Shown here piece after piece: positions 3,125 to 64,000 of a stretch of DNA of 64,000 nucleotides. The position numbers were made by a program, and so were the translations under genes. Every line of letters starts with the position of its first letter. The stretch's first letter is position 1. The notes beneath the pieces were generated by a model. The model worked only from the letters and a program-made list of their open reading frames with translations. It had not been told where the DNA came from and did not search any database. Where the stretch lies: positions 1 to 64,000 of the IMG/VR virus record IMGVR_UViG_3300043411_000942; one strand, given 5' to 3'.

Positions 3125-3150
3125 TTAAGGTTCGCGTTAAGGTGTACGTA
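3125..3150 (+). promoter_or_regulatory. Phage promoter motif TTAA-N18-CGTA; ATG 9 nt downstream (3160)
   Basis: ttaa ggttcgcgttaaggtgta cgta agagagagt atg. Confidence 0.75.
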
Positions 3151-3159
3151 AGAGAGAGT

Positions 3160-3531
3160 ATGAACATCAATCCTACGACTTTGAAAGATGCTGGTTACCG
3201 AGGCCCCTACTCCCAGCCTATCCATGGGGATTTCTGCCGAGGTTTGTACCAGAAGACCGTTTACGGTCAAGCTCATGGCAAGGTGATGAAGAGCTACTTC
3301 CTCAACGTCCTCATCTGGGAGTTCCCAAACCGCCCCCTGAGCGCTAGCGTGGACGTGGTCTTCTCCCAAGAGGATGGCCTGACCTCGCGTGGAAGTGAGG
3401 GCCGTGATTGTTACACCTCGTTCAAGGTGGACCTTTACCTTGGCGGTGACACAACCATCGAGCAAATGGAGGAGTTTTACGCGAAGCTCTACCTGAAGCT
3501 TGAGTGTACTCCGGACGTCCACAACAACTGA
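3160..3531 (+). CDS. Hypothetical protein
   Basis: ORF; start placed 9 nt after the promoter motif. Confidence 0.7.
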   Translation: MNINPTTLKDAGYRGPYSQPIHGDFCRGLYQKTVYGQAHGKVMKSYFLNVLIWEFPNRPLSASVDVVFSQEDGLTSRGSEGRDCYTSFKVDLYLGGDTTIEQMEEFYAKLYLKLECTPDVHNN

Positions 3532-3539
3532 GATTGAAC

Positions 3540-4073
3540 ATGACGCAAGTTACAAGATTCAGAGATATTCCACCCTACACTAAGAGCCCACCCTACACTG
3601 TGAATGTAGGGTTGGGTTACTTGGTGGCACACTATACCATGTGTGTAACCGAGTGGGGTCTGGACGTGTCCCCAGACTTCCAGAGGGCTTACGTCTGGAC
3701 GGCTAATCAGAAAGTCAGTTTCGTGGAGTACTTCCTACGTGGAGGGTCCTCTGGAGTGGACATCTATACGAACTGTCCTACTTGGAATTCCATGGTACCC
3801 CCATTGGACCCCAAGTCATGGTTCGTTCTTGTCGATGGGAAGCAGCGACTTGACGCATTGCTCGGGTTTCTTAACAACGAGTTCCAAGTGTTCGGGGGAA
3901 GCTACTTTCGAGACTCACCAATGATGAGGCAAGTTGACCACACAACTGGTAAGATTATCTACCGTCGAGACTCGATTACTGAGAAACTAATAGCTAATCG
4001 TGTGAATCAAGCAGTTACAAATGCTTGGAAAGGGGTGGCTCCAATCAAAGAGAGCCCCCGAATCCTCCATTGA
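3540..4073 (+). CDS. DUF262 (ParB/Srx-like, GmrSD N-terminal) domain protein
   Basis: PDFQRAYVW and VDGKQRL signature motifs. Confidence 0.8.
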   Translation: MTQVTRFRDIPPYTKSPPYTVNVGLGYLVAHYTMCVTEWGLDVSPDFQRAYVWTANQKVSFVEYFLRGGSSGVDIYTNCPTWNSMVPPLDPKSWFVLVDGKQRLDALLGFLNNEFQVFGGSYFRDSPMMRQVDHTTGKIIYRRDSITEKLIANRVNQAVTNAWKGVAPIKESPRILH

Positions 4074-4148
4074 GGAGTTTGCCAATTCTGGTGGCTACTT
4101 TGATGCTTTTGGGGTATACGCTGGTCAACCCAAAACCAAGAGGCACAG

Positions 4149-5366
4149 ATGCTAAGTGAACTTGAGATTCAGCTAGTAACCAAGTATATCTTGAGCCTCG
4201 ATGAGCGATCAGACCGCTATGGGGATGAGTTGGTAGACCACGTACTCCATCGCGTATCCTATCTCAACTATGATGATGGGGTCGATTGGGACACCTATGG
4301 AGCTATCTGCTCGTTTAGGGATGCGTTTGAAGATGAAGCACGAGTGGCCTTTGTTGAGAGAGTCCTCCAAGGAGATAGCCCACAAGTAAGTGCCAAACAA
4401 CCCGATGCCCCATGTCACATTCTGGCTGCGAGTCAATTTGACATCAAGACTATCGACCTCGTATTCAAAAGGGCTCAGGAAATAGAGCATTCGACAACTG
4501 AGAGACTTCTACACAAGCTACAGGGTAAGACCTTGGCTTGCGTTTTCTATGAGCCGTCTACCCGAACATCCTCCAGCTTCATTGCTGCAATGGGTAAGCT
4601 TGGTGGGAACGTGATACCCATCACACAAGGGGTCCAGTACTCAAGTGTTTCCAAGGGTGAGTCGCTAGAAGATACGATCGTCACCTTGGGTCAATATGCA
4701 GATGCAATTGTTCTTCGTCATCCTACGGTAGGGGCTTCAGCTCTTGCGGCTAGCGTTAGTCCCGTGCCAATCATCAATGCAGGGGATGGTATTAGTGAGC
4801 ACCCCACGCAAGCTCTTCTAGACCTCTACACGATCCAAAGAGAATTTGGGCGTACCTCCAACCTTAAGGTAGCCTTTGTAGGGGACCTTGCGAATGGACG
4901 GACGATCCACAGCTTAGCTGCACTCTTAGCGCTCTACCCAGGAAATGAGTTCTCCCTGGTATCCCCATTCCTACTGAAGCTAAGTCATGATTCGGCTCCT
5001 TACCTGCGAATCAAAGACAAGGTAACCCATGAGATTCACGTAAAGGATAGCCTGGTAAAGGCTGAGGAGGTCTTGGCAGAGGCAGACGTGGTCTACATGA
5101 CGCGAATCCAGAGAGAGCGGTTCGGGTTCCTAGAGAACTACTCTGAGGTAAAGGACTCCTGCATCCTCACGGAGGAGCTAGTAAGGAAGCTCAAGCCCTC
5201 GGCACGTATTCTACACCCCCTCCCGCGAGTCAACGAGATTCCAAGGGAGATCGACTCTGACCCTAGAGCGGCCTACTTCCGAGAGGTCAAAATGGGGCTT
5301 TACGTGAGGATGGCCCTCCTAGACCTAACAATGGGGTCTACCTCCCCTTGGCTACCCAACCTATAA
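4149..5366 (+). CDS. pyrB: Aspartate carbamoyltransferase catalytic subunit with an N-terminal extension of about 85 aa
   Basis: FYEPSTRT, SKGESLEDT, LRHP, INAGDG..EHPTQALLD, GDLANGRT, YMTRIQRER and HPLPR motifs. Confidence 0.96.
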   Translation: MLSELEIQLVTKYILSLDERSDRYGDELVDHVLHRVSYLNYDDGVDWDTYGAICSFRDAFEDEARVAFVERVLQGDSPQVSAKQPDAPCHILAASQFDIKTIDLVFKRAQEIEHSTTERLLHKLQGKTLACVFYEPSTRTSSSFIAAMGKLGGNVIPITQGVQYSSVSKGESLEDTIVTLGQYADAIVLRHPTVGASALAASVSPVPIINAGDGISEHPTQALLDLYTIQREFGRTSNLKVAFVGDLANGRTIHSLAALLALYPGNEFSLVSPFLLKLSHDSAPYLRIKDKVTHEIHVKDSLVKAEEVLAEADVVYMTRIQRERFGFLENYSEVKDSCILTEELVRKLKPSARILHPLPRVNEIPREIDSDPRAAYFREVKMGLYVRMALLDLTMGSTSPWLPNL

Positions 5367-5388
5367 CATACTTATCCTGAGGTTAGGT

Positions 5389-7394: not shown

Positions 7395-7401
7395 GAGTAA
7401 A

Positions 7402-15645: not shown

Positions 15646-15708
15646 TACGTACGCTGGGGTGAGAAATTTAACGAAAAAGACGTTAAGGGTTGGGAGCCAC
15701 GCTACGTT
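15646..15708. promoter_or_regulatory. Back-to-back divergent pair of TTAA-N18-CGT(A/T) promoters
   Basis: Minus strand: TTAA 15671-15668, CGTA 15649-15646. Plus strand: TTAA 15683, CGTT 15705, ATG 15718 (9 nt). Confidence 0.75.
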
Positions 15709-27311: not shown

Positions 27312-27656
27312 TTTTCTCTCTCCTCAAAGAACCTACGGACACCAACCGAGAAATTTAACCACAGAAGCAGCTTGACCCGTACCTGACTGGAGTGTAGCCA
27401 CAGACCGTACACCGTTGGGTGGCAGGTAGCGGGTTCATCGCAATGATGGTCGCAAGAGTAAACCAGATTGTCGGGATCTCCCGATGGCACCACATGCCTG
27501 TACGCCAGTCTCTAGCGTAGCCCATATTTTGAGCGTACAGCTGCTTCGCATCAAAAGCACGATCCTGAAGACTGTTCTTTTCCAAAGGTTCGACGAGTCT
27601 AGCGTACTCCTCAAGACGCTCGCCTCGATTCCACTCCTCAGGCCAACGGTGTAGTT

Positions 27657-29735: not shown

Positions 29736-30599
29736 TACGGTAGAAGCTCAGGAAGGCTTAAGCTCAAAAACGATCCTCAAGGGAACAGAAGCGTTAACTC
29801 GGTGAAAGTCTCAATAAGCTCTTCCACCCCTACAAGAATCTCAGACTCCAAGTACATAAGCTCAGGCTCGCACGGAGTAGCGCTGTAAACAAATGTGTTC
29901 TTTCCTTGCCCCATGGCGTACCCTAGCTCCCAGGAGGCTGAGCGACCAGAGGGGAGCACAAGGATGCAAGTATCGCAAGCACGAAGGGCTGCTATGTCGT
30001 GTGAGTATCCAAATTTAGCAATCGGATGCTTAAGGGCGTCTCGATACTGTGCAGGAGTCCAAGACTCCCAGGCGGGGTCAATTTCCGCCCATGAGAACCC
30101 ATGAACTCCAGGAGCAGGGCTACGGAAGTCGTAAACTTCGTGCCCCAAGCCTCGAAGCAAAGTTACAACATGAGGTTGAACGGTGTTGCGCCACGAGCTG
30201 GCAACGTAGATGTTTTTCAAGGTACCCCATCTCCCTACAAGATAAAACCGACCATGAAGGCTTCCGAGCAAGGGTGGACCAAGTCGGCCTTCACCTCAAA
30301 TTCAGAAGCCCAACCAGTCTGCCCCGCCTCAGCTTCGGCACAAAAAGCGTTACAGATGACCTCTACGGCTTCGTCTCTACAGTCCACAGTGTTCACGGTT
30401 TGCCCTGCGACCGTACGCAACTCTGCGATCTGAGGGTGGTCTGACGGTACAAGGAAAAATCGCACATTTTCGGGAAACTCTGCGTACACAACCAGGGTCT
30501 TATTTGAGGTAGTCATAGGTGTTCTTACGGTGGAAGCTCAGGAAGGCTTAACTTCTCTACACCAAAAAGATGGGTTAAATCTCGTCCTTGGTGTACGTA
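29736..30599. promoter_or_regulatory. Three promoter motifs: 29736-29761 (-), 30526-30551 (-) and 30575-30599 (+)
   Basis: The two minus-strand copies are near-identical (tacggt[a/g]gaagctcaggaaggcttaa). Confidence 0.75.
29777..30220 (-). CDS. Nucleoside 2-deoxyribosyltransferase/TIR-like fold protein
   Basis: IYVASSWRN, DI.AL..CD.CILVLP.GRSA.WELGYAMG.GK. Probable TTG start. Confidence 0.75.
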   Translation of the reverse strand: MKNIYVASSWRNTVQPHVVTLLRGLGHEVYDFRSPAPGVHGFSWAEIDPAWESWTPAQYRDALKHPIAKFGYSHDIAALRACDTCILVLPSGRSASWELGYAMGQGKNTFVYSATPCEPELMYLESEILVGVEELIETFTELTLLFP

Positions 30600-44829: not shown

Positions 44830-46065
44830 GTTGATACCTACGTAGGGGATGAGGGAGGGCTTAACCGGAAACCAACTCTTTGAAAGAAGGTTGCAGGTGG
44901 AAGCACCCTAGGACGGTCCCGCTCTCAGAGACATAGCCATGCTTCTCTAGGAAGTGGGCATCCTTCATCTGGGGCCAGCCTACGTAGTGGGCTTCACCTG
45001 GACGTCGGAACTCCTGCTCAGCCAGGGAGCGGATAAGACCTGAGTCCTTGATGGCTTGCAGCCGGTCTTGCAGGGAGCCGCCCGTCTTAGGGGTAGCTCC
45101 TGCCTTACCTGGTCTATTTTTTCTTGCGGGCATTTGGCTTCTTGGTGGTTTGAAGAGGGATGACTGGGATGGGTACGTACTTCTTCCCGTTCCAGTAGTG
45201 CTGAGCCGCCCTGGTCTCCTCTTCGGAGGGGATACGGTAGATGACCTCTTCATGGGTGTGGCCGAGGTTGCAGACCTGAGAGTGGGTTTGAACCACGAAG
45301 GTCTCCAGGACCTCAGAAGGAATGACCCCTACCGCATCGCAGTTGGTCTCATCCACTCGGTTGATCCATGAGAAACTTGCCTGACACTTGGGGCAGGCAG
45401 GATACTTTCCGTAGGGCTCAGGAAAGCAGCTGTAGTGCCCATACGAGCAGATTGCCTGTACTTCACCTTCGTAGCTCATTTGCTTTTTCTTTCAGGAGCG
45501 CTGGGGAGGGAGTAGGGGTTGTAGCCCTTGGCTCGAAGCTCAAGAATGCGAGCAGGAAGCTCAGCTAGCTCGTAGGTAGTGGGCTGGGGATCAGAGACAA
45601 TAAACTCGTGTGGGTAGAGCCAGGACTCGGAGGCAGCACACCAGTAGGTGAAGCGACCCTCTGGATCGTCTTGCACCAAGTGGAAGGTGCGGTAGGGGTT
45701 GGTCTTCTTCATTGAGCCACCACCTCGCAGATCTGCCACCAAGCGTCGCGGTCGCATGTCTCACCGCGTGGTCTCCGGTCTCCGGTCCTCCTCATGACGC
45801 CGTCATCTGCGACGGGCATAATGGTTCGGTGCTTTGTACATGTCTTTTGCATGGGATTGCCTCGACCCTAGTTGGGAATGTAGACCTTAACAGCCTTGCC
45901 GTTAACAACACGAGCGAAGGCGAGGCTAGCGGGGCCTCCGTGGTTTGCGTCGTTGTTGTACAGGAGGGCCCCCTCGGGGGCTTGCTGCACGGCCTGCCTA
46001 CGCGAGCCAAAGCAGCGGAGCCAGGTGGGGGCGCTAACCCAGGTGAGCTTCTTCATGTAGAGTCC

Positions 46066-46370
46066 TACGAAAGGAGCTGGTAGCTCCTTAACTACTTTTT
46101 AGAAGGTCTCCATCTCGACCACTTGATCTGCGCGGACAACCAGGTCTGCCTGAGCCATCCCACGCTCTACCTGGTAGGCTTGGAAGGGGGACTTGCAGAG
46201 GTAGAGTGTACCGAGACCATCGTCTCCGCCCACGATCCAAGTCTCGTTGTACTTGTTGTTGCAGCCGAGACTCGCCTCATAGGTCCAGGTCTTCGCGCCA
46301 TCCTTGAGAAGCTTGACCAGGGTTCCGGTTTTCATACAGAGTCCTACGAAAGGGGCGGGTAGCTCCTTAA
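46066..46370 (-). promoter_or_regulatory. Two near-identical promoters (46066-46091, 46345-46370), each 9 nt before an ATG
   Basis: agagtcctacgaaagg[a/g]gc[t/g]ggtagctccttaact occurs twice. Confidence 0.8.
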
Positions 46371-47641: not shown

Positions 47642-47694
47642 TACGAAGGGGTACACTCACGATTTAACTTAAATCCCTCACCCTTCCTGACGTA
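47642..47694. promoter_or_regulatory. Divergent promoter pair at the main strand switch
   Basis: TTAA c TTAA (47664-47672). CGTA lies 18 nt away on each side, and ATGs follow at 47632 (-) and 47704 (+), each 9 nt further. Confidence 0.8.
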
Positions 47695-47703: not shown

Positions 47704-50700
47704 ATGACCCTCAGTCTTACCACCAGTATCCATGCCGATCAGCCCTTGTACCAGCAAATCATAAAGGCCGTTGAGGTCTTCACCAACGCCAAGTTTGAGG
47801 GGCCCCACACCGTGGAGTCCCCGTCCAAGGGGTCAATCCTGACCCTGACCTGGGACCCTAATGCAAGATGCTTTCTGGTCGAGGGACAGGTGAGCAAGTA
47901 CACCTCTGTGACGAGGGGAAATGTACTGAAGCTTTTATCTGGGGGAGCTGATCATTTTGGTATAATCCTTGCGGTAGCCAACATGATCCCCCACCTTTAC
48001 GGTGTCTGCAAGGAAGAGGAGCAGCGTCAAAAAGAGTACGCTGTTCAGGTTCAACAGGGGATGGCAAACTTCCTCAAGTCGTTCGAGTGATCCTCAGATC
48101 CTCCAAGTACATCCTGAGCAAGACCAAGGTTGCTATGAGCATTGACAAGACTGATATCTTCTTTGTCTGGACTGGAAAGGTCCCTACCCCTGAGCAGGTT
48201 GCAGCGGCTCAGGTTTACATCCAGAAGGAGTTCGGGATCAATTTCCAATTCCCCGAGCCATCAGATGCGGATGTGGAGTACTTCAAGCGGGTCTCTAATC
48301 TGACTGAATTGGAGGGGTTCCCACGCTGCTTTAACGGTGGGGTACACAAGGTCAAGAAGGTCATGGAATTCTTGGATGGGCTTGGCATTGGGTCCCGTGT
48401 CAACGTGTCAGAGTACACCTACGATGACTACCTCAAGCCTCCGTACAACATCTACTCCCGTCTAGGTGAGGAGCACACTGGGATTGCTGACGCCAAGGCC
48501 CAAATCCAAAAGGTGCTCGACCTCCTCCCCGCTAGAGATCGTAAGTACATCCTCTCGACCCTTGGGAAGTAACGATGCACTTCTACGTCTACAGCTTCAA
48601 GGATGGTCACTACACTTACGCTAGGACCGAGGGCAGTTGTCGGTCACACCATCCGAAAAGCTTTCTACTGAAATCCGGTTAAACCTCGGGGCTTCCTACA
48701 CGTAGTAGGGATCACAATGGCAAAGTTTCGAGTTAGTGCGACCATCTACAAGACAGATAAGAGCCCCAGGACGTCGGTCTTTGACGGCCCTTGGAAAGCT
48801 TCTCCAGAAGAGGCCCTTGACGCATTCAAGGCGAAGCTTGTAAAGCAAGGGCTGGACCGTAAAGGTCTTTTCAAACCCTTCGTTGCTGAGCAGCTGCCCC
48901 GAGGAATGGCACCCGAGGCGGATAGCCGATACGGCTATCAGCGACTCTCTGAGGATGCTGCCACCCAACTCAACCTTCGTGGGTTGAGGGCATTCAAGTA
49001 AGTTCTAGGTTAAACCCTCAACCCTCCCACACGTAAACAAGAAAGAAGGACTACCATGACGACCAAGAAGATCATCGTTTCGCAGGAAGACTACAAGGAA
49101 GCCGCTCAGGAGATGGTGACCTTTCTCCAGCGCCAGCAGGAGAAGCTAGGGGAGATCATCAAGAACTTGAGCATCTCGACCGACTTCTCCCCTATCACCA
49201 TCGAAGCCATGCGTGAGGCCACTCAGGAGATGAAGGCCACTCCGGTTCAGTTGGCAAAAATGGTCAGCGTTTCGGTGCAACGGGGTCTCAGCTCCTTCGA
49301 GGAAGATAAGCTTCGCTTCCAGGAAGGCCTGAACGAGCGTAAGCAGAAGCTCCTAAACGGCACCCTCCGGATCAACCGACGAGATGAGGCGGCTGAGTGA
49401 AGCTGCCGATCCTCATCGATGCTGACGAGGTTGCAGGTGTCTACGCTGCCCTCTGCTCCATGGTCTTGGACATTCACTGTCCTCAGGATCAACTTACAGC
49501 TGAGGAGTGGGAGAAGGCCAAAAGCACTTGGGCTCGGCTTGAACACGAGATGAATCGTCGAGCCTTGGAGGAAAAGAATGAGCACACGACCACTGCACAC
49601 GATCGCTAGAACCAACTCCTCGGTCCACATCACAACCCCACGTAACTCCGAGGTTCTTGGTCTTATTGGGGGTGGTCTCGTACACGAGGGGTTAGCCCTG
49701 ACCAATGACGAGGTTCGGGCCCTTCGGAAGCTCTACGGGTACGACGAACCTCGGAAGCGTCCGCGCTTGTCTGAGGAAGAGGAGCCTTCTTACGAGGTTC
49801 GCGAACAGATTCGAAAGGCGGACAAGAGCCAAAAGGTGGAGGACTTTCATCAGGCGGGGGCAGACCGTAACCTCATCCGACACGCCCAACTTGATGGGTT
49901 GCGGCTAGTTGCCTGGCTGGCCAAGTTCGTAGACAAGGATGAGGACCCTCTCGCCTTCCTTGTCAGTGTAATGGCAGACAGCGGGATGGACGTGGACATC
50001 GAAGACATCGAGTGGGTTCACGGTACAGCTGACGACCCCCCTGACTTTGACCCACGATAAAGGTGGAACTATGGGTAATCAATCAACATTAGTAAGCGTT
50101 CCAGTCCAGCGTAAGGAGCTTGTAGCTTTGCTTGACCTCGAAGCTAGGGTAGTTTGCCTGCATTACGCAATGGATCACAGCCCTGGGAACGACCTGGGAG
50201 CAACGGCCATTGCCCTTGCTCACGCTGACCTCCGAGCGGCCATCAAACGCCTTGCGAACCTACGAGGGCATGAGCTGAGCGGCTCCCTCTTTCTGTCTGA
50301 GATGCTCGTGCGGCATGCCACGAAACTTCCATGATCTAGTTAACTCCTTCAACCTCCCTCTCGTAGGTACAGGTATGAAGTTCAAGAAGGTAGCTCCTGC
50401 GATTCACCTCTCTTCTACCTCGGTCACCTACCGTGACATCTACGGGGGAGTTCATACCTCCCAGGTGACTCTGCGCATTGATGCGCGGACCAAGGGTCGG
50501 ATTCGGGTGGACCGGGCATCCTTCGGGATGTGGGAAGCCATTGACAACAACTGGCTTGGGTGTAAGACCCTCGTAGCTGCGCGTAAGATCGCAGAAGACT
50601 GGGCTACCCGAGCCAACGCCCAAGCTACCCTCAGCCCGCTTGAGTCCTAGATTCAGGTTAAACCTTCTAACCTCCAAGACGTAGTACTCTCCATGACCAC

Positions 50701-53700
50701 CTCCAAGTCCGCTAGCTACCCCTCAAAGACCACTGAACTCACGGTTCTGCGAAAGTTTCCGTCCGCATTTACCTGGGGACGGATCGTGGCCTTCCATGAT
50801 CTGGGTCCCTACACGATCGCAGGGTTCCACCCTATCTCCTACACTGGGGAAAGCAAAACCAAGCATCTGGACGTCACGGAGTATCATGTGTGGGTGGACG
50901 GTAAGGATACCTGTACGGGAGCTAAGAGCTTGGAGGAAGCCATCCTGCTTGGGATTGGCATCCGCAACCTGGGTGCAAACAGTGGCCCCCACATGGCACG
51001 AGCTGCCTTCAAGATCCTTCAGTGACCCCCTACCAAAGGGTTTGCGAGCTGCACTTCAAGTTTCTTGAAGACGTTCACACCCTTCTCGTAACTGAGGCGG
51101 GAGCAGACCCAGACTCCAAGCAAACCTTTATGAGGTACATGCTGGACCCTACAGGGAACCAGGTAAAGGAGTACCGCTTCAAAGGGGCGTTTAGAGGCGG
51201 TGGTAAGCTCTGGATGGACAACAGTAAGTTCTGGATGGGCAACTCCCCCTACTGGGTCTCCTGCTACCCCGAGCACTACGCAGAGCTTGGTGCTCGTGTG
51301 GTCTACCTCAACGAAAAGATTGAGGCCCTCTACCTAGCGTATGCAACCAAGAGCCGAGAGCTAGTCCCATGAACAAAGCACGTCGTAGACTCGCCCGAGC
51401 ACGTAGGTACCGAGACCGGGCTTACATTCCACAAGGCTGGACCATGGGTGGAATGAGCCCAGAGTTCCCAACGAAGACGGAAGAGCAGGTAGCTCGATTC
51501 GTGGCGGAAGTCACGAGGCGAGCACGGAAGAACAAGGTCCTTGTTATCACTTGGAACGACCGCATGGTGCAAGACCTTCGGCGTCTCCTCCCCACAGACC
51601 TGACCACGGCATGGGATGTGGCGCTCCATGTGAAAGTAGTTTCCCTGTGGGATGCCTTTCACCAGAGCAATCTGGCCCTCAACTTTCGCGGGCACATCAC
51701 TGCCTTTCCTGCCTCTAACTTCAAGCTGAGAGCTTAAGCAGCTCTCGTCTCTTTCCGTAGGGTTCAACATGTACGAAGATTCCAGGCGACCTCAAGAGGT
51801 CAAAGCCTACACGAAGGAGATTCTTGCTCCTCTGATGTATGAAGCCTACATTAGCACCGCCTACAGTAGCACCGAGGGCAATTGGCCCGACTGGTCGGGC
51901 CTTCCTGAGGGTGTAAGGAAGTTTTGGCTGCTCAAAGCAAACAAGTCGATAATGTTCCTTGCGCTGAGTGGCACGAGTATCACGGACTCGGAGAAGCACG
52001 TAGCACTTCTAGCCTACCTCCTGTGGGATGGTAGCCTGTGGGAGGGCAGTGGCATTGATGCTTGGATGGCAGTGGCCAGACTTGTTCTAGCTAAGTTGAA
52101 AGGAGCCTAATCATGGACCCCAAGAACAGAGAGCACCTGAGAGCCCGTCTACTTCAAAAGAATCTCCCTAGCCTGACGGGCACCTGGGTCATTCGTGGGG
52201 AGGACGACAACGCAGACCTGGCTGGTCCTCACTATACGCCGAAACTTGGCAAGGTGAGGGGGACCTATGCGCAAGCAGTGGACTACGCCCTGTCCATTCC
52301 TAGCTTCGTTTCATGGGGTAGAGGGGGTTCGATCGACCTTGACCAAGAGGAGGAAGTCATTGACCTCGACAACCTTCAGGAAGCCCTTCGAGAGAAGCTC
52401 TTTCTTGAGCGTGACGCCCTGAACAGGCGCATCGACGAGATTGAGAATACCCTTCGGGCTATGCCACGAAAGGGGTAACAAGTGATTGAACCACAAGAGA
52501 ACGAAGAGGAAGCACTCGCTCTTGCCCTTCGACTTGGGCTTGAAGAGTGTGAGCGTCTGAGGGCCAAGTGTCAGGTGCTTGAAGACCGACTAGATTATCA
52601 AGACCAGCTTCGGTGGTTGGGAAGGGAACCTGTATGAGCGGTGTAGTTTACTTCAAGGACCGTACGGGGTACATCCGTAAGCTTCCTGCGGACGCCCCTG
52701 CTCGCTACAAGGGTAGTGGGGATATGTTCCTGGTAGGCGCTGCTAGCACGACGGATGTTCTAATACAGGTCTATGACAATGGGTGGATCGAGGGGTCTGT
52801 TATTGGACCCCCAACCCGCTATGTCTTCGAGCTAGTGTGGGAGTCCTGGGAAGGCGAGCAAGACCTCCGCTCTGCTCTCCTTGCATCGATAAAGTCCTCG
52901 GAGGTAGCCACCAAGCCGATCTTGACCCGAGTCTACCCGGTCTGCGACTCGACGAAGGCTGTAGTGACCCGATCTTGTAAGCTTTGACCTAGGCTCCTGG
53001 AAGAGTAAAGCCATGAATACACTTCAAGAACAACTTGCCCACCTACGCTCATTGAAGGACGGGTGGGATGAGGACCCCAGGGAGCGAGAACCCGCTCCAG
53101 CACCTACCCCAAAGGTCATCGAGGATGCTGAGCGGGTAGCTCTAGCCCTTGAGGCCTCAGGCTTCACGGATGTCACGCTCAGTGCTGACGTCATGGGTGG
53201 CGTTTGGCTGGGTGTGAGCCGAGGGTGGATTATCTTCCGCAACAAAGGCACGAGAATTGCCTTGGGTAAGGGATTTTGAACCTCAAGATCCTACAAATTC
53301 AAGTCTTGGTTAGGCCCCACCATCCCGACCTCGTAAGCTTTGACCTAGACGACGAGGTATCTAGCCCATTTCCTGTCTTTGGGGACCGAGCTTCTGTCTC
53401 GACTCTCGTTCAGGCAGGTTATGGGTTGGGTTCAGGAAAACTTCCCTGGGGTTCCTGTCCTTGTTGAAGAACACTCCCAGCTTGGCTCGAAAGAATCTGG
53501 TTAAAGGTTGACCCCGAGGTTACGTAGGATAGAATGAGGGTGAGACGAAGAGAACCTCTTCAATCTGCCCAACCTCCTCAGCTGGACCTAATCAACCTAG
53601 CTGAAAGCACTCGACGAGATGAGGGAGAAGTGATTAACTCTCTTGGCAAGCTTGGCGTAACCTTCTGGCGTAACCCGGAAAAGCTAGGCAAAAAAGCCCC

Positions 53701-53719: not shown

Positions 53720-53858
53720 GCTCTCTAGGTTCTCTCGGGTGTGAGTTTGGGCAGACTTAAGAGGCTCTCGGAAGAGACCCAAAGAAAAAACGTAGAAGAC
53801 GCAAAATAAGTTAAGAGTGATGAAGCTCTTGGCGTAATGAGAATCAAGGAGACTGAAA

Positions 53859-55029: not shown

Positions 55030-55240
55030 TTAAGGGTTAGCCCTGAGCGTACGTAGTAGAGTGTGGGTCACCTGAGACGTGACCCCTCTAAAACCGCGTG
55101 ATTATCTTTTCGATTACCGGTAAGAGCCCAAAACCGCGTATTCAGTTAGCGTATGGTCATGGTGCGGCGGTAAACCCCAAACTAAAGACTATCCAAGACA
55201 GACTATCCAAGACAGACTAGACTACCCAAGACTACCCCTC
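55030..55240 (+). repeat. Promoter motif followed by a non-coding hairpin and AAAACCGCGT / AGACTA(T/C)CCAAGAC repeats
   Basis: TTAA 55030, CGTA 55052, hairpin gggtcac-ctgagac-gtgaccc from 55065; repeats at about 55090, 55130 and 55185-55238. Confidence 0.65.
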
Positions 55241-56408
55241 TTCAACGACCCAAAATCCCTTTCCTACAGCAACGACCAGGGTCAGAAAATTTCTAGGGGA
55301 AATTTTTTGAGGGCCCAGAAAACTCAAAGAGCATGGCAACGAGTTTCCGATTCACTGCAACTGCAAATCGAAATGGCATGGGGGCCAAGAACCCTGGGGT
55401 ATACAACACCTGCACCTGCCACCCGATACAGTGGGGGGCTAAGAAGGCAGCCCGTCGAGCCCGGAGACGGATCTCCAAGCAAGTCATCCTAGAGGGGTGT
55501 GGAGAGTTGACATGAGGGGGCTGACTGCGATGGAGAGTGAAGTGCTTTCTGAAGACTCGCGAATCGAGGATGACGTCTACCTCAATCTTCTCGCAGAGCC
55601 GCTAGACCCGTCCGGTGGCGGCAACATGTCGAGCGAGATCGCAGCAACGCGTGAGAGGCTTACCGTGCGCGGTTGCCTGGAGCTATTTGTGTTTACCTAC
55701 TCAGACGGATCTGACGACTCGACTTGGCGCATCACCTCTCGTGGCCGTCTCGCTCTCCTTTGCCACCAGGCCCTGAAATGAACTACCTCGAAAAGTTGAA
55801 CGTACGGCTGGATGAGGCTCACTACGTGAGTTGCCCACAAGACTTCAAGGGTGACTTGCTACGAGCTTACGAAGTAGCTGACAACCCCAAGGCTGAGGCA
55901 GCGTTTTTCATCGCGTGCCATCATATGGCTTTGTTGGGAGGGCACAAGGACGTAGCCGTGCTCTTTGCGGATCTTGTGACCCTGATTAAGTAGATGAGGA
56001 AGCCCAAGCCACGTAAGAACAGAGCATACAGACGCAGAGGCAAGCGTGCGTGGTACGCCGCGATGAAAGCCACCGGGGAGTACCTGCACAGGAAGATGAG
56101 GGAGCCGAGCATCACACGCAGTATGTTCTCGATAACCCAGGTGACAGAAGTGGAGGCTACTCGATGACTACTTGGAAGACGACATGGTTGGCCAGGCTAC
56201 ACGTTCGGTTCCGTAAGTGGTTGCTGCCGAGGCTGCACCATCCCATCTGCCCCTTGTACCGGTACGAGTTCATCCGGATGCTAGAGCTATTCCACCATCG
56301 TAAGCCGCACACGCGATCCGCCCTGTGGGGTATGGAGGCTCAGTGTTTTTGTCCCAGAGCACTGAAGTAGTAGTTAAGTCTCCAGGCTCAAGCTACGTAG
56401 GACTCTAC

Positions 56409-56522: not shown

Positions 56523-58210
56523 ATGAAGCCCGTCTATATTTGTAAGAACCTGAATGGTGATCGGCACTTTTGGTGCATTGCCGTTCAAGACTGGGTTCGA
56601 GAGGGTCAGGGGCATACCCCTACTCCGTACACTCAAAAAGAGGCAGAAACCGTTATTGGTTACTGGGCTGATCACTGGACTGATCAACGAGGTGCTTACA
56701 TCCTCGTTGATGACTCTGCCCCTGTTGAGCAGACCGAGCAAGCTATCCTCGTTCATGCCATCAAAAAGAACATCGAAGACATGCGAGTACAGGTAGCCCG
56801 ACTGGAGGCTATTGCGGACCTTGCCCGAGAGCTTGCTCACGGAAGACCTGTACACACAGAGGATTGCAAAACGGTAACCCTCTCTGAGATGGGGCGAGTT
56901 GAGCACGCAGCCCGAGACTATCAGGGTACGGACACCTCGGGTTGGAAAGAATCCAACTGCGACTGTAAGGCTGGGGAAACTTACCGGACCTTGAAGACCC
57001 TATGCGGCTAAACTTCAAGGTAGGTTTGAGGCCCATGCAGAAGTACTCCGTGTGTCAAGGGTCCACTCTTAAGGTAGGGGAAGTCATTACTATTCATAGT
57101 AATGGTACGTCTTTCAAGGTCATTGTAACAGGCATCCAAACACATACCGGAGGGGGCCAAGTCTACTTTGTAGGCCTTCTCACGGATGTAGGTTAAGCCT
57201 CACCCCACCCACTCCGTAGGTCTCAGTATGAACCACTCTCTTGATAAGGTCGGCACCCCCTGTCCCGTTTGCAAGCGGACCATCTGCTTGTTTGAGTTCT
57301 CCGGAATGGCACCCTACACTTACTGCTCAGAGTTCTGCGACATAGCCTCAGAGGCTCAGGTCAAGGAGTTCCAGAACGCCTCCCCAGGGGATTTTTGCCT
57401 GTACCCCTGCTGTTCCTGTGGGGCAGCTCTTGAGGATGAGTGGGCCCCCACCTCCTGCTGTAGCTCCTGTGACAGGACCGCACGAGCTGAGAATGCAATG
57501 AACCTGCTCAAGCAAGCCAAGAGCTTGATTAAGAACAGGCTCACGAGCAAGAAGGCTTATGACCTTGTGAAGAAAATCGAACTGGCTCTGGAGAAGGGGA
57601 TATGAGCGGCCTTAAAACAACTGCGGAAGAGCGCGCCAGGTTTCGAGGCGCTTACGAGACCTGCGGATTCAGTGATATACGAGAGATGAAGATCCTTCGG
57701 GACCTGGAAACGTGTATTGCAGTACTACAGGAAATTCAGAACGCTTCTCACGATCGTAATGGCTACGACATGACACGAGCGATCGAAAAGGCTCAAGCTC
57801 TTCTAGCCTCCCGATGAAAGCCTCCCGATGAATCTTACCAAGCACCTAGTTAGAGACGAGTCTGAGTTTCTAGCTCTCTTCAAGGATTGGGAGCTAGACG
57901 ACATTGAAACCCTCCTTGGGGTAGAGTTCGCGTTCACGGATGGCACGTTCTACAGTGACCATTGCGAGGATGAGGACTACGAAGACTCCCGCACCATCGA
58001 CTACTCCAAGTACCGGAAGGATGAAGCGGCAAGATTCCCAGTGTCCTACCCTGCTATCGCTACCCTCCTGCAAGGTACGCAAGGCACGTCACTCAAGGCC
58101 ATGATGCTCGTCTACCCATCGGATTTTGGGGTTGTCCCAGCTGTCCGGAGTCTGACTCTTGCTGAATTGTGGGACGTGGTACCTTCAGCTCCTAGTACGG
58201 ACATGACCAA

Positions 58211-58819: not shown

Positions 58820-60248
58820 CAACATGCTCTTCAAAGTAACCTGCATTCGCGCGGCTAACGTCGAAGTGAAGCCCCAATACCGAAGCTCACTCAAGTGTTC
58901 AGCAGCCTCCCCTGAGGAAGCCGCTAAGGCCTCCTTCGCGTTGGAGATGGACTCCTCCGTGCGAGTGTATGAGGTTGTAGACATGGATATCCTTAGGGCG
59001 CACTACATTGAATGTGGGAAGCAAGTCTACGTAAAGGAGGTAGCTCCTAGAATCTGGTTAAGTCTCCACTGGCCCCCTACGTAGGGTTCAGTATGAAGAA
59101 GGTTAAAGACATGAAGCAGGCTCTCTCCAAGGATGAGGCCATGCTCGTCAAGTACCGAGACTATCAGATCACTTTGGCCTCTGGTGGTTCCGTGGAGAAC
59201 CTTAAGGCCTCCGAGGTAGGTGGGATTATCCACCAACTTGAGCAGTGCATCGAGAACAAGAAGAAGCTCCTGGCTGCTTCCCTGTAAGCCCAAACTAAAG
59301 GGAGGTTAAGCCATGGCGGAGAATGAAACACAGGAGGAGCTGGGAGTTCGACTGGCCAACGAGGTCATTGACGAGCTTATCCAGGAAGAGCTAGCGGAGG
59401 CGCTAGCTGCCCTCAACGAGTTGCCCAGCCTGTGGCAGGCCATCGGCACAACGGCCGCCCATCTGCGGAGGTGTAAGCACGGCACTCCCGGCTTCAAGAA
59501 GTGGGACGCCGTTCTGACCAAGTTCCAGAACGATGCGCACGAAAAGACCTCGCTGGTTCGCATGGCCCTCAGGACTGCCAAACGCGGAAAGAGAAACAAG
59601 TAATGACTACACGAGTTGAAACGGTCATGTACTTTGGGAACCAACACAATATGATTCCCGTGTCTACCTACACTAGCCCCAATGGAGCTACACACACCTT
59701 TCGTGGTGGTAACTCAGAGAAGGTCTTGAAGGGCGTCCAGGCGATTGAGGACCTTCGTCTGTCCAAGTTCGAGCTTCAGATTCTTCGTACCCTCCTTGAC
59801 AACCTCTAACATGTGTCAAGCTAAGCGAGACCTTGAGGTAATCACCCTCAAGGGGATGGTTCAATACCATATCGTTATGGGGAACACCCGAATTGCATCC
59901 ACAAGTGTATGGCTCTCCCAGTGGGGCCCCTTGTTGCCCACTGGGAAGCTTGCGTGGGGTTGCACTCCTGAGTGCTCATCCTTGACAACCTTTAGCTGAC
60001 AGATAAACCCATGGAACTTTACGGCTGGTACTCAGTAAAACAGAATGCGGTTAGTGGGTATTGCGTGTACCTCCTCGATGGGACAGACACTCAAGTCCAT
60101 GTAACCGTAGTTTGCCGCAACGAGGGGCACCCTAACACTCAAGGGTGCAACTGGGATGACTACCGGTTTGTAGGTAGGGTGGGTGAGATTGTCACTTCAT
60201 TTGTAAAGCAAGGATATGGAAGCTACACCTACAACGCCTTCAACTTCT

Positions 60249-60536: not shown

Positions 60537-61038
60537 CCCCATGCTAATTGATCTAGACGTAGACTACAGTGGGCTTCTGAGCCGTGTGGATACCGGACGA
60601 TACCTCCTACTCGACTACATGGCGAAACACTACCTGTTGGATACCAATGGGTGGGAGGATGTGGACCTGTTGTGGCCGGAGTACAACCTCCCTACGGGGG
60701 AGGAGCGGCTAAAGGCCATGATGGCTAGCATGCAAAACAACACTTGGTTCGAGACCTACGGCTCCTGCGACTCACCCGACCAGTTTCTAACCACGGAGAC
60801 TGCTCGGAGGATTCAGGACTCACCCTGGCCACTTCTGGTTGTGTTTCAACACATGACTCGGGAATCCTGTGGTGGTTACCGCTGGCACAAGAACGGACCT
60901 TATATCGGAGTGAAGAAGCCTCATTACGAGCACCTTGCGGACGAGCCTGAGATCACGGAGATCTACCAATTTCACATTTACCGGAAGCTGGAGCAAAAAG
61001 CTAGTTAAAGCTCCAGGACTGCTTCTCGTAAGATAGAA

Positions 61039-61258: not shown

Positions 61259-61306
61259 GGTTCATTTTGTGGTTAAGCTGACCCCTGCATTCTCGTAAGT
61301 ATAGGT

Positions 61307-61486: not shown

Positions 61487-62312
61487 TGCGTATTGTTGAC
61501 TCAGATCCGTTGGACCGAGAATTGATGGGCGTTATCATTCTGAACAAGAGTGAGGCGATTCAGATGGTTCACGACCTGGTGAACATGCTAGCTGACGCTC
61601 CAGGTGCTGGGAGCACAAGTTACGCCATATATCGAGCAAAATCGATGCCGATGGCCATGAGTCGTGTCGCATTTGCAATCAAAGATTCTAGTTAAGTCTC
61701 TCCCCACACAACCCGTAGGAGTTAGCATGCAAATGAACATGAACATGAAGGGCACCTTGGTCTTCATGCGAGACCTGGAGGAGGACGGGTACTTCCTCTG
61801 CTTCTGGGAGGGCAATAAGGTCTTCCGAGAGTTTCGCGTCACCCGAGCAGACGAGAGTCGATTCTTCTTTGAGGAGTGGGACACCTGGGAGACAGTTGAG
61901 GCTGCCCCCACCACCATTCAGGAGGCTGAGCGGGTGGCGAAAGAGGTCTACGCGACAGGTGAGAGATAAGACCAGAGGTCTTGATACTAAGCCTTGCATT
62001 GGTAAGGGTTGAACCAGTGATCTTCGAGCCAGGCTACTACTGGATCAAAGGTCATGGTGTCTGTAAGTACTCCCATGCCACTGGAGGGCTAGCTTACAAC
62101 ACTGGGGAGCCTACTCACGTTGTGAACCCCTACCAGTTCGATTCAAACAAATTTGAAGGGAACCTCTACATCGAAACTTCGGACATCACCAGACCAGCGT
62201 CTGAAAAAGAAGCCAAGTCGTACAAGGCAGCAGTTCGGAGAAAGCTCACGTCTTCAGGCGTGAAAAGAAAAAACTAGTTAAGGCCGTTACCCCAAAGGAC
62301 GTAGGTCTCTAC

Positions 62313-62990: not shown

Positions 62991-63005
62991 AGCACTTTTC
63001 TTCTT

Positions 63006-63112
63006 CATAGGTCTGGAAGCCAAGCGGTCTAGTTTGAGGAGACTGATCCTCTCTGTGAACTAGGACGTGGGGTCAACGCACGGGAAAACCTAGCCCTGCT
63101 TCCAGACCTATG
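63006..63112 (+). ncRNA. Structured RNA candidate closed by a perfect 15-bp stem
   Basis: cataggtctggaagc pairs with gcttccagacctatg; internal helices ctagtt/aactag, gagga/tcctc and cgtg/cacg. Confidence 0.6.
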
Positions 63113-63145
63113 GGGTAGGGGACTTCTTAACTACCGAGGATAAAA

Positions 63146-63337
63146 ATGAGAGATATAGTTGATTGGACCGAAATGACACCAGAAGAGGAGGCGGAGTTGG
63201 CGGACAGAAGAATGAGGACGTGCCAGGCATGCATGGGCTTTGGTGGCCACGGAATCTCCGGCACAGCTCAGTGGTCCGAATGCTCCGCATGTGGCGGTAC
63301 TGGGGCACGACGCTCATCTAAGCACGGGAAAACCTAG
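63146..63337 (+). CDS. Small protein with two DnaJ-type CxxCxGxG zinc motifs
   Basis: CQACMGFG and CSACGGTG; GAGG SD. Confidence 0.6.
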   Translation: MRDIVDWTEMTPEEEAELADRRMRTCQACMGFGGHGISGTAQWSECSACGGTGARRSSKHGKT

Positions 63338-63408
63338 CCCTGCTTTCAGACTTGGTTCTTTTGTCTATTGTAGTTAAAGACACCTCCAAGCCGTACGTAG
63401 GTCTCTAT

Positions 63409-63651
63409 ATGAACGACTCAAGCTACCTCGCTCTCTGGCAAGCTGGAAACAACGAGGGGGACGGCTACATCCCCGACTTCGGAGGCGATGACGTGCATGC
63501 AGCTGCCGCAGCCTATGAGGGTGAGGGGGCCACCGTGATCCACTGGTCTACCACGGACGATGACGTGACGGTTCTGGACTACTACGGTGTAATGATCGCC
63601 ATTGGGGACGCTCACGGTCCTTGGGCTGTCACGATCGACCGGGGTATCTAA
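63409..63651 (+). CDS. Acidic hypothetical protein
   Basis: ATG 9 nt after promoter 63374-63399. Confidence 0.65.
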   Translation: MNDSSYLALWQAGNNEGDGYIPDFGGDDVHAAAAAYEGEGATVIHWSTTDDDVTVLDYYGVMIAIGDAHGPWAVTIDRGI

Positions 63652-63737
63652 CCATGCGCTACATTGGAAAACGACGAAAGCTTCGTCAGTGGGTGGTTTG
63701 AGTTAAACTTCCTAGACAACTCTTCGTAGGTACAGAC

Positions 63738-64000
63738 ATGAACACCTCCTCTAAGATTACGGTTGGCTCCTCGGTGAAGATCCTGAAGGGCTGTAAGGCT
63801 AGGAACGTTTCCGTGGGGTCTGCTACGATCAAGGACGTGACCGAGCTGGGGAAGGATTACGGTTACTCCGTACGGGTCCTCCTCGCCTACAATGGACGGC
63901 TTATCGCTTTCTACGCGAGGCACCCTAACCGGCTGGCTGACCCTCAGGTTAGCCTCAACGATGGGAACCCCCTCCACAACATCAAGATTTGCCTTTCTTA
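63738..64000 (+). CDS. Hypothetical protein, runs off the window end
   Basis: ATG 9 nt after promoter 63703-63728; open to the end of the window. Confidence 0.6.
   Translation, partial: MNTSSKITVGSSVKILKGCKARNVSVGSATIKDVTELGKDYGYSVRVLLAYNGRLIAFYARHPNRLADPQVSLNDGNPLHNIKICLS

What the first reader, a model, noticed from the sequence alone, without database searches (positions are those of the whole stretch)
3125..63740. Window-wide TTAA-N18-CGTA promoter with a fixed 9-nt distance to the ATG: a probable leaderless regulon
Seen: 31 sites found by eye, given as TTAA position. Plus strand: 3125, 15683, 30575, 31489, 32907, 35238, 47669, 48679, 49010, 50658, 51734, 53501, 53811, 55030, 56374, 57193, 59058, 61005, 61273, 61692, 62278, 63374, 63703. 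Minus strand: 15671, 29761, 30551, 39832, 44864, 46091, 46370, 47667. The spacer is 18 nt (17 in four sites) and free in sequence. In 20 sites the ATG lies exactly 9 nt after CGT(A/T), several without any SD. Sites with long leaders (49010, 53811, 15671) carry an SD-like sequence. Established: a -10 CGT(A) element is typical of ECF-type sigma factors. Inference: an alternative host or phage sigma factor drives mostly leaderless early mRNAs, which could escape a shut-off of SD-dependent translation. The motif also corrects many start codons and reveals genes under 60 aa.
Basis: partly seen in the sequence, partly recalled or inferred. Interest (0 to 1): 0.8.

Follow-up and report, generated by a model that had tools for sequence, protein, structure and literature searches.

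The report
Private leaderless promoter of a huge phage
A roughly 380-kb uncultured bacteriophage repeats one two-box signal (GTTAAR, 17 free bases, CGTAGG) about 80 times in front of its genes and tRNA clusters, placed so that transcription should start on the A of the ATG, which suggests that more than 50 of its messages have no ribosome-binding leader.

Summary
TTAA-N18-CGTA occurs 29 times in the window against about 1 expected. All 31 listed sites exist, and 20 of them have the ATG exactly 9 nt after CGT(A/T).

The window is bases 1-64000 of a 233-kb IMG/VR contig of a jumbo phage; a 99% identical relative is 380 kb. The motif is not limited to the window. There are 79 extended-consensus sites between 3.1 and 152.8 kb. 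None occur in the adjacent replication module or in any other IMG/VR lineage.

It behaves as a promoter:
- It points the same way as the genes downstream.
- It forms back-to-back pairs where the gene strand switches.
- It also precedes tRNA clusters.
- Its two boxes show 0 of 396 substitutions between variants, while the spacer shows 5.6%.

Its geometry matches alternative sigma promoters: SigW is TGAAAC-N16/17-CGTA, and sigma-28 has TAAA with the same spacing.

The leaderless reading is supported indirectly. The -10 box lies 13 nt before the ATG. The -1 base is a pyrimidine in 47 of 48 sites. All these starts are ATG, and no SD precedes them. A second class has leaders of about 22 nt with an AAGGAG-type SD.

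No complete sigma gene was found in about 195 kb of genome searched. "Early" timing and escape from translational shut-off remain speculation.

The parts
3125..3150 (+). promoter site, N18; ATG 9 nt downstream (3160)
   Evidence: JGI called the start 42 codons further in.
15646..15671 (-). promoter site, N18, with a leader (GTG at 15 or ATG at 21 nt). Back to back with 15683(+).
15683..15708 (+). promoter site, N18, CGTT variant; ATG at +9
27334..27358 (-). promoter site, N17; 22-nt leader with GAGGAG; heads a long minus-strand operon
29736..29761 (-). promoter site, N18; ATG at +12
30526..30551 (-). promoter site, N18; ATG at +9. Back to back with 30575(+).
30575..30599 (+). promoter site, N17; ATG at +8
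31489..31514 (+). promoter site, N18, CGTT variant; ATG at +8
32907..32931 (+). promoter site, N17; ATG at +9
35238..35262 (+). promoter site, N17; ATG at +7 opens only a short ORF; the next long ORF is 82 nt away
39807..39832 (-). promoter site, N18; ATG at +9
44839..44864 (-). promoter site, N18; ATG at +9
46066..46091 (-). promoter site, N18; ATG at +9; the spacer holds a GGAGCT/AGCTCC inverted repeat
46345..46370 (-). promoter site, N18; ATG at +9
47642..47667 (-). promoter site, N18; ATG at +9. Back to back with 47669(+) at the strand switch.
47669..47694 (+). promoter site, N18; ATG at +9
48679..48704 (+). promoter site, N18; ATG at +12
49010..49035 (+). promoter site, N18; 20-nt leader with GAAGGA
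50658..50683 (+). promoter site, N18; ATG at +9, same as the JGI start
51734..51759 (+). promoter site, N18; ATG at +9; a hairpin overlaps the -35 box
53501..53526 (+). promoter site, N18; ATG at +7; 61-aa ORF not called by JGI
53811..53836 (+). promoter site, N18; 22-nt leader with AAGGAG
55030..55055 (+). promoter site, N18; no ORF nearby. Followed by a hairpin and about 300 nt with short direct repeats.
56374..56399 (+). promoter site, N18; ATG at +9; 37-aa ORF not called by JGI
57193..57218 (+). promoter site, N18; ATG at +9
59058..59083 (+). promoter site, N18; ATG at +9; the best PWM score in the window (30.6)
61005..61030 (+). promoter site, N18; ATG at +7 opens a 27-aa ORF
61273..61297 (+). 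promoter site, N17; ATG at +9; 59-aa ORF not called by JGI
61692..61717 (+). promoter site, N18; ATG at +9; the JGI start is 2 codons further in
62278..62303 (+). promoter site, N18; ATG at +9; 37-aa ORF
63374..63399 (+). promoter site, N18; ATG at +9; the JGI start is 19 codons upstream, inside the promoter
63703..63728 (+). promoter site, N18; ATG at +9

Best explanation
The motif is the main promoter class of one arm (about 150 kb) of a jumbo phage of at least 380 kb.

It is most likely read by bacterial multi-subunit RNA polymerase carrying an alternative sigma of the ECF or sigma-28 kind, not the housekeeping sigma. GTTAAR would be the -35 box and (TA)CGTAGG the -10 box. Transcription would start at the tenth base after CGTA.

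- In about two thirds of the sites that base is the A of an ATG, so the mRNA has no leader and would be translated from its 5'-terminal AUG.
- In a second class (about 8 sites) the start codon is 20-27 nt after CGTA and the short leader carries an AAGGAG-type SD.
- In a third class the promoter precedes tRNA clusters.

The specificity factor is not identified. I consider a phage-encoded factor, either in the unsearched part of the genome or too divergent for Pfam, more likely than a host ECF sigma.

Shown: the motif, its placement, its conservation, and its restriction to one lineage and one genome arm.

Inferred: that it is a promoter, that a sigma reads it, where transcription starts, and that the mRNAs are leaderless.
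For: Abundance:
- 29 sites against 0.98 expected in the window.
- A PWM scan of the first 118 kb gives 68 sites against 0.6 in shuffles.
- There are 79 extended-consensus sites between 3,125 and 152,790 of the contig.

Placement:
- 42 sites have an ATG that opens an ORF of 30 aa or more exactly 9 nt after CGTA, and 53 have one within 7-12 nt. A random position has a 0.5% chance of this.
- Sites follow the strand of the local genes and form back-to-back pairs at strand switches: 15671/15683, 30551/30575 and 47667/47669.

Transcription rather than translation signal:
- The same motif lies 14-34 nt before the first tRNA of clusters that hold 45 tRNAs and a tmRNA.

Selection:
- In 36 orthologous site pairs between variants there are 0 of 396 substitutions in TTAAR and CGTAGG. 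The spacer shows 5.6% and the flanks 2-4%.

Start-site signature:
- The base before the ATG is a pyrimidine in 47 of 48 +9 sites, against 47 of 98 other genes.
- Over all N18 sites, including those without an ATG, the predicted +1 is a purine in 63 of 67 and the -1 a pyrimidine in 55 of 67.

Leaderless features:
- All starts within 12 nt of the motif are ATG. Other genes use ATG 94, GTG 10 and TTG 5 times.
- The first base of the -10 box is 13 nt before the start codon, as for known leaderless genes (PMC3160421).

Geometry of known alternative sigma promoters:
- SigW is TGAAAC-N16,17-CGTA (PMC2375139, PMC5758882).
- Sigma-28 is TAAAGTTT-n11-GCCGATAA, which reads TAAA-N17-CGAT. Here the site reads TAAR-N17-CGTA (PMC2859248).

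Housekeeping promoters:
- Sigma-70-type promoters are not enriched: 8 against 9.1 expected.
Against: - There are no transcription start data.
- No protein with sigma region 2 was found in the contig from 1 to 166.8 kb or in the relative from 155 to 194 kb.
- The only sigma-like protein is a 204-aa protein with region 4 only. It is nearly invariant in relatives that lack the motif.
- The ECF hallmark AAC in the -35 box is not conserved, and the -10 box is not the sigma-28 GCCGATAA.
- If the arm is truly early and the factor is phage-encoded, it is unclear how the factor is made first.
- Some sites (55030, 35238, 61005) have no convincing gene downstream.
Confidence: 0.6

Rival explanations
1. 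The motif is a promoter, but the sigma is a host ECF-type or sigma-28-type factor that is active or induced at infection. The phage encodes no specificity factor of its own.
For: - No complete sigma gene was found in about 195 kb searched.
- The motif has the -10 box and spacing of a cellular ECF sigma (PMC2375139).
- The motif drives the small-ORF arm, which looks like an early region and must be read before phage proteins exist.
Against: - The host is unknown, so no host sigma can be compared (one search gave no host lead).
- Cellular ECF sigmas are normally held by anti-sigmas and are scarce. It would be unusual for about 80 promoters, including tRNA clusters, to depend on one.
- Roughly 185 kb of the 380-kb genome were not searched.
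Confidence: 0.22
2. The motif is the promoter of a phage-encoded polymerase that does not use sigma, either single-subunit or a divergent multi-subunit enzyme. Transcription would start elsewhere, for example at the GG right after CGTA, giving a fixed 9-nt leader without SD.
For: - No sigma was found.
- The GG after CGTA is highly conserved and would suit an initiating GG.
- Large unannotated proteins exist in the genome.
Against: - Promoters of known single-subunit phage polymerases are conserved over a continuous stretch (my own knowledge; not checked here). Here two short boxes are separated by 17-18 bases that evolve faster than the flanks.
- No polymerase domain appeared in any Pfam or PHROG table for about 195 kb.
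- The pyrimidine/purine signature sits at the ATG, not at the GG.
Confidence: 0.08
3. The two boxes are the binding site of a double-stranded-DNA regulator with two helix-turn-helix domains, such as the tandem sigma-region-4 protein. It would activate or repress transcription, and the real promoter elements would be something else.
For: - The two boxes are about two helical turns apart and both have palindromic cores (TTAA, ACGT).
- The genome encodes a 204-aa protein with two region-4-like stretches.
Against: - No other promoter elements are visible at the sites, and sigma-70-type matches are at chance level.
- The strict distance to the ATG or to a purine start fits a start-site-determining element.
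- Both recognition helices of that protein are invariant in relatives that lack the motif.
Confidence: 0.06
4. The repeats are the ends of mobile or recombining gene cassettes. They would be conserved because they are recombination substrates, not because they are read as promoters.
For: - Variants carry different small genes between conserved sites.
- Breakpoints of homology lie within 40 nt of a site 12 of 59 times, against 4.8 expected.
Against: - Only 11 bases are conserved, and the spacer and flanks are free. That is too little for homologous recombination and does not look like a site-specific recombination site.
- This reading does not explain the fixed distance to the ATG or the position before tRNA clusters.
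- The breakpoint enrichment is confounded, because both features sit between genes.
- Promoter and shuffling roles can coexist.
Confidence: 0.04

Closest known systems
ECF (group 4) sigma promoters, e.g. Bacillus subtilis SigW: TGAAAC-N16,17-CGTA (PMC2375139, PMC5758882)
   Same: Both have two short boxes, the same -10 core CGTA, and the same spacing when the -35 box is read as the hexamer TTAARN followed by 16 free bases. The spacer sequence is not conserved.
   Different: The -35 box is GTTAAR, not xGAAAC, and the AAC core is present in only a minority of sites. No ECF sigma or anti-sigma gene was found. There are about 80 sites in one phage genome rather than a small stress regulon.
Sigma-28 (FliA/SigD/WhiG) promoters: TAAAGTTT-n11-GCCGATAA (PMC2859248)
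   Same: The -35 core TAAA compares with TAAR here. The distance from that core to the CG of the -10 box is identical (17 nt). The region-4-only protein of the phage scores best against SigF and FliA region 4 in the PDB.
   Different: The -10 box here is (TA)CGTAGG, not GCCGATAA. No FliA-like gene was found.
Leaderless genes of bacteria, recognised by a -10 box about 12 nt before the start codon (PMC3160421, PMC12340547)
   Same: The -10 box is at a fixed distance before the start codon (first base 13 nt upstream). Starts are ATG only and there is no SD.
   Different: In those organisms the box is the housekeeping TANNNT. Here it is an alternative-sigma type box with a strong -35 partner, and the genes belong to a phage.
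Phage-specific promoter classes read through phage sigma factors (SPO1 gp28, T4 gp55; from my own knowledge, not checked here)
   Same: One private consensus is repeated many times over one part of the genome and is absent from another part, as expected for a temporal class.
   Different: The consensus is different, the factor is unknown, and leaderless starts at this scale are not a feature of those phages.
Huge phages of Al-Shayeb et al. 2020 (PMC7162821)
   Same: The genome is over 200 kb and carries many tRNAs, a tmRNA, rpL7/L12-like genes and a peptide deformylase. That paper notes that some huge phages rarely have identifiable SD sequences.
   Different: That paper links missing SD to rpS1 and describes no promoter. 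Here the missing SD is tied to a defined promoter placed for leaderless starts.

Membership tests
ECF-type sigma promoter | Two boxes with a -10 core CGT(A/C) and 16-17 nt between a -35 hexamer and CGT | tested here: met
   67 sites have TTAA-N18-CGTA and 12 have N17, which reads as a hexamer plus 16 or 15 free bases. Reference spacing from PMC2375139.
ECF-type sigma promoter | -35 box with the conserved AAC core | tested here: not met
   The consensus is GTTAAR followed by C, G or T in similar numbers (23, 19, 20 of 67). AAC occurs only where the site reads TTAAAC.
ECF-type sigma promoter | A cognate sigma with regions 2 and 4 encoded by the same genome or by the host | tested here: inconclusive
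   No region 2 was found in about 195 kb. There is one region-4-only protein. About 185 kb of the genome and the host were not searched.
Sigma-28 type promoter | -35 TAAA and -10 GCCGATAA separated by 15 nt | tested here: not met
   The TAAR box and the spacing fit, but the -10 box is (T)(A)CGTAGG. Only the CG, and an A after it, are shared (PMC2859248).
Housekeeping sigma-70 promoter | -35 TTGACA and -10 TATAAT/TANNNT | tested here: not met
   The -10 box has no TANNNT. Consensus sigma-70 matches are at chance level: 8 against 9.1, and 14 against 12.9.
Leaderless mRNA | Primary 5' end at, or within a few nt of, the A of the start codon | not testable with these tools
Leaderless mRNA | -10 box about 12 nt before the start codon, AUG start, no SD | tested here: met
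   CGTA begins 13 nt before the ATG in 42 sites. Every start within 12 nt of the motif is ATG. SD-like 4-mers occur in 4 of 16 such genes, close to chance.
Single-subunit (T7-like) polymerase promoter | Continuous conserved stretch of about 17-23 bp up to the start site, and a polymerase gene | tested here: not met
   The spacer is free and evolves faster than the flanks. No polymerase domain was found in about 195 kb.
Archaeal BRE/TATA promoter | TATA box centred about 26-27 nt before the start, and an archaeal host | tested here: not met
   TTAA lies 32-35 nt before the ATG. The genome carries a tmRNA, a peptidoglycan transglycosylase, RecA and GroEL, which point to a bacterial host.

The most novel reading that the evidence does not exclude
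A huge phage runs more than 50 genes as leaderless mRNAs from a private promoter read by a specificity factor that current profile libraries cannot recognise: a new or split sigma, or a virion-delivered factor. It would pair this with its own translation parts to favour 5'-AUG initiation over SD-dependent host messages. Those parts are four L7/L12-like proteins, a peptide deformylase, a tmRNA and 45 tRNAs. This would give a concrete mechanism for the weak SD usage reported for some huge phages.
Probability: 0.15. Interest if true: 0.8.

Novelty: new variant of a known kind. Interest (0 to 1): 0.55.

Why it matters
How huge uncultured phages are transcribed is almost unknown outside the phiKZ and AR9 group. 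This analysis gives a complete, testable promoter map for one arm of such a genome:
- about 80 sites with predicted start points;
- corrected starts for a quarter of the genes next to the sites;
- several unannotated genes of 37-61 aa.

If the leaderless reading holds, this would be one of the largest leaderless gene sets in any phage I know of. It would also be tied to an alternative-sigma type promoter rather than to the housekeeping -10 box.

The motif also marks the boundary between two transcription regimes in the genome. It offers a handle for finding the unknown specificity factor.

Tried and rejected
- **Search for the sigma or polymerase.**
  - I scanned window ORFs with Pfam and PHROGs.
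  - I walked along the contig and its relatives with all 12 look-ups. One search was wasted on a wrong start codon.
  - I ran extra Pfam and NCBIfam scans.
  - Only a region-4-only protein turned up. I rejected it as the likely factor because its helices are invariant in relatives without the motif.
- **Host identification.** The carbamoyltransferase query against species genomes gave one 34% match to a Thermodesulfobacteriota MAG. The tmRNA is the standard one-piece type. Sample accessions are not in the paper library.
- **Relatives with the same or an analogous motif.**
  - Nothing was found in LR745208.1, Tunturi_5, the helicase relatives or 14 GroEL-neighbourhood loci.
  - Those loci are too short to exclude a different private motif.
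- **Other readings.** An archaeal promoter, a T7-like promoter and a sigma-70 promoter were each considered and rejected (see the membership test).
- **Non-coding RNA.** Rfam found none in the window. The region after site 55030 is not unusually structured, with z = 0.07.
- **Close phage relatives.** Megablast of 44-64 kb against GenBank phages found nothing.


Full report
**1. What the window is**

The window is bases 1-64000 of IMG/VR contig IMGVR_UViG_3300043411_000942 (232,937 bp; JGI Ga0451708_0000005). A 99% identical relative, IMGVR_UViG_3300020049_006032, is 379,936 bp.

No GenBank phage is close at the DNA level. The SNF2 helicase is about 50% identical to those of a 485-kb uncultured phage and of the 308-kb Tunturiibacter phage Tunturi_5.

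The window encodes mostly small proteins of unknown function. The recognisable ones include a peptidoglycan transglycosylase, a carbamoyltransferase, a DnaJ-like protein, nucleoside deoxyribosyltransferases, a GmrSD-like domain, an ADP-ribosyltransferase and RNA-repair enzymes.

This is one arm of a jumbo phage of a bacterium. The bacterial host is indicated by a tmRNA, RecA, GroEL and peptidoglycan enzymes.

**2. The observation**

TTAA-N18-CGTA occurs 29 times in the window, against 0.98 expected and a maximum of 4 in 100 dinucleotide-preserving shuffles.

That includes the four with a 17-nt spacer and the two with CGTT.
- Exactly 20 of the 31 have ATG 9 nt after CGT(A/T).
- Four good sites were missed: 15303-, 27358-, 46981- and 50340+.

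The consensus is longer than stated: an A/T-rich patch, G, TTAA, R, a C-rich and G-poor spacer, T, A, CGTA, R, G, six free bases, pyrimidine, purine.

**3. Extent of the motif**

I joined loci fetched by pattern scans and by look-ups and rebuilt the contig from 1 to 166,763 without gaps.

- It holds 88 TTAA-N17/18-CGTA sites. Of these, 79 carry the extended consensus (67 with N18, 12 with N17).
- The first is at 3,125 and the last at 152,790.
- A PWM scan of the first 118 kb gives 68 sites against 0.6 in shuffles.

After 152.8 kb the genome changes. The module that holds GroEL, the clamp loader, ribonucleotide reductase, RecD2, RecA, primase and the PolA-type exonuclease has no site. This covers the contig to 166.8 kb and the relative from 155 to 194 kb.

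Two complete scans of all IMG/VR contigs with strict versions of the motif gave several hits only on these two contigs:

- The hits lie at or below 153 kb on contig 942 and at or below 131 kb on the relative.
- All other contigs gave single hits, as chance would.

Variants from other assemblies carry the motif in front of partly different genes. These are NCBI GCA_020047435.1, several Logan runs and an ENA scaffold of 120 kb.

More distant relatives with 53-74% identical GroEL, on contigs of 286-452 kb, lack it in the 21 kb examined. The motif is therefore private to one lineage and limited to one arm, about 40% of the genome.

**4. Why it is a promoter**

- **Placement.** 42 sites have an ATG that opens an ORF of at least 30 aa exactly 9 nt after CGTA, and 53 have one within 7-12 nt. 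A random position has a 0.5% chance of this.
- **Orientation.** Sites point the way the genes run. They form back-to-back pairs exactly where the coding strand switches: 15671/15683, 30551/30575 and 47667/47669.
- **tRNA clusters.**
  - The same motif precedes tRNA clusters in the region from 127 to 153 kb, which holds 45 tRNAs and a tmRNA.
  - The CGTA box ends 14, 21, 25 and 34 nt before the mature 5' end of the first tRNA.
  - A signal that serves both proteins and tRNAs acts on transcription, not translation.
- **Conservation.** In 36 orthologous site pairs between variants there is no substitution in TTAAR or CGTAGG (0 of 396 cells). The spacer has 5.6% and the flanks 2-4%. The sites were chosen for having the motif in one partner, so the test asks only whether the other partner kept it. 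It always did.
- **No housekeeping promoters.** Sigma-70-type consensus matches are at chance level in the densest region, 8 against 9.1.

**5. Where transcription should start**

In sigma-dependent promoters the start lies a few bases after the -10 box. Two signals point to the tenth base after CGTA.

- Over all 67 N18 sites, including those without an ATG there, this base is a purine in 63 and the base before it a pyrimidine in 55.
- In the 48 sites with ATG at +9 the preceding base is C or T in 47. In 98 other ATG genes of the same genome it is C or T in 47.

A pyrimidine at -1 and a purine at +1 is the known preference of bacterial polymerase. This is from my own knowledge and was not checked here.

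Further points fit a leaderless start:

- The first base of the -10 box is 13 nt before the start codon. That is the arrangement used to recognise leaderless genes in bacteria (PMC3160421).
- All starts within 12 nt of the motif are ATG. Other genes use GTG or TTG in 15 of 109 cases.
- Substitutions after the ATG fall mostly on third codon positions, 12 against 4 and 5 on the first and second. The frame set by that ATG is therefore the one under selection.

A second class has the start codon 20-27 nt after CGTA, four times exactly 22 nt. These carry GAGGAG, AAGGAG or similar about 8 nt before it. The phage thus uses both initiation modes, and its host reads canonical SD sequences.

None of this replaces a mapped 5' end.

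**6. What reads the motif**

The two-box form, the strict spacing (18 nt, sometimes 17) and the free spacer are typical of sigma factors.

- The -10 core and the spacing equal those of B. subtilis SigW, TGAAAC-N16,17-CGTA (PMC2375139, PMC5758882).
- The -35 core and the spacing also equal those of sigma-28, TAAAGTTT-n11-GCCGATAA (PMC2859248). That reads TAAA-N17-CGAT, against TAAR-N17-CGTA here.
- Neither family fits fully. The ECF core AAC is not conserved, and the sigma-28 -10 box is different.

I searched for the factor in the contig from 1 to 166.8 kb and in the relative from 155 to 194 kb. I used Pfam, PHROGs, NCBIfam and the precomputed Pfam tables. No protein with sigma region 2 and no polymerase subunit appeared.

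The only sigma-like protein is L250:18128-18742 (204 aa), at 183,260-183,874 of the 380-kb contig.

- It matches sigma region 4 at residues 44-96 with E = 4e-12, and has a second region-4-like stretch. It has no region 2.
- It has 667 homologues. The 120 best are 63-98% identical to it, and some lie on contigs of 286-570 kb. In an alignment of 12 of them (67-76% identical to it) both recognition helices are invariant.
- Because relatives that carry it lack the motif, it is a poor candidate. It more likely serves a promoter class shared by the whole clade.

The factor is therefore unknown. It could be a phage protein in the unsearched 185 kb, a phage protein too divergent for profiles, or a host alternative sigma. 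I favour a phage factor because the motif is private to one lineage and drives about 80 units, including the tRNAs. This is an inference.

**7.

- The promoter reading and the ECF-like -10 box hold.
- The leaderless reading is well supported indirectly.
- The gene-call corrections are real. Of 36 sites in JGI-annotated stretches, 18 match the called start, 9 imply another start, 7 have no called gene and 2 have no ORF of 30 aa or more.
- 'Early' is not shown.
- The idea that leaderless messages escape a shut-off of SD-dependent translation has no evidence here. The genome does carry translation-related genes of the kind described for huge phages, some of which rarely show SD sequences (PMC7162821).

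**8. Novelty**

Private phage promoter classes and leaderless phage messages are both known. The new element is their combination at this scale in an uncultured jumbo phage:

- an alternative-sigma type promoter, not a housekeeping -10 box;
- placed at single-base precision before more than 50 start codons;
- also used for tRNA clusters;
- with no recognisable cognate factor.

I rate it a new variant of a known kind, with interest of about 0.55.

**9. Limits**

- There are no RNA data.
- The host is unknown.
- About 185 kb of the genome were not seen.
- Relatives were sampled only around one gene, so a different private motif in them cannot be excluded.

Noticed in passing
L185 (contig 942: 122964-136979), L270, L222 (140686-155323): A tRNA region of about 26 kb holds 45 tRNA genes and a one-piece tmRNA with tag ANDNAYATPALAAA. 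It is interspersed with at least six HNH endonuclease genes.
   Followed up: partly
L250:18128-18742:+ (380-kb contig 183260-183874): A 204-aa protein made of two sigma-region-4-like helix-turn-helix domains, with no region 2. It has 667 homologues, and the 120 best are 63-98% identical. In 12 aligned members from contigs of 83-570 kb both recognition helices are invariant. It may be a core transcription factor of this clade of huge phages.
   Followed up: partly
L126:16863-17144, L131:18813-19097, L270:2300-2866, and a further copy in variants: Several small proteins carry the ribosomal L7/L12 C-terminal domain. The genome also encodes a peptide deformylase, a CCA-adding/polyA-polymerase-like enzyme, RNA ligases and a polynucleotide kinase.
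   Followed up: no
window 1: Contig 942 and an independent Logan contig (SRR35185575_1603348) begin at exactly the same base, while other assemblies read through it. This could be a physical genome end, a repeat boundary or a variable junction.
   Followed up: no
contig 942, 44-90 kb versus L127, L128, L129, L141 and loci of contig 6032: Variants carry different small genes between conserved promoter sites. Homology breakpoints lie within 40 nt of a site 12 of 59 times, against 4.8 expected. This may be cassette shuffling at promoters, but it is confounded by both features lying between genes.
   Followed up: partly
window 55030-55530: The strong promoter site at 55030 has no ORF behind it. 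It is followed by a 7-bp-stem hairpin and about 300 nt with short direct repeats (GACTATCCAAGACA-like). There is no Rfam match and the folding z-score is 0.07.
   Followed up: partly
window 46066-46091, 51727-51759, 61226-61260: Inverted repeats (terminator-like hairpins) overlap the -35 box or the spacer of some promoter sites. The end of one transcription unit and the start of the next may share the same 40 nt.
   Followed up: no
L257:~15086(-), L258:~15254(-), L269:~15096(-): Relatives that lack the TTAA/CGTA motif share a conserved CATC-N16/17-GCAT site at one syntenic position after GroEL. Its meaning is unknown.
   Followed up: no
L051:2400 (contig 942: 64021, just past the window end): A full-consensus site has ACG where its paralogues have the ATG (GGTCTCTACGGA against GGTCTCTACATG). 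The next long ORF starts 55 nt away. A leaderless start may have been lost here.
   Followed up: no
L270:2863-3330 and 4088-4708; L132:13030-14600: A JAB-domain protein and a ThiF (E1-like) protein lie next to each other in the tRNA region. Elsewhere there are an AdoMet-decarboxylase/Acb5-like gene and a papain-like peptidase gene.
   Followed up: no
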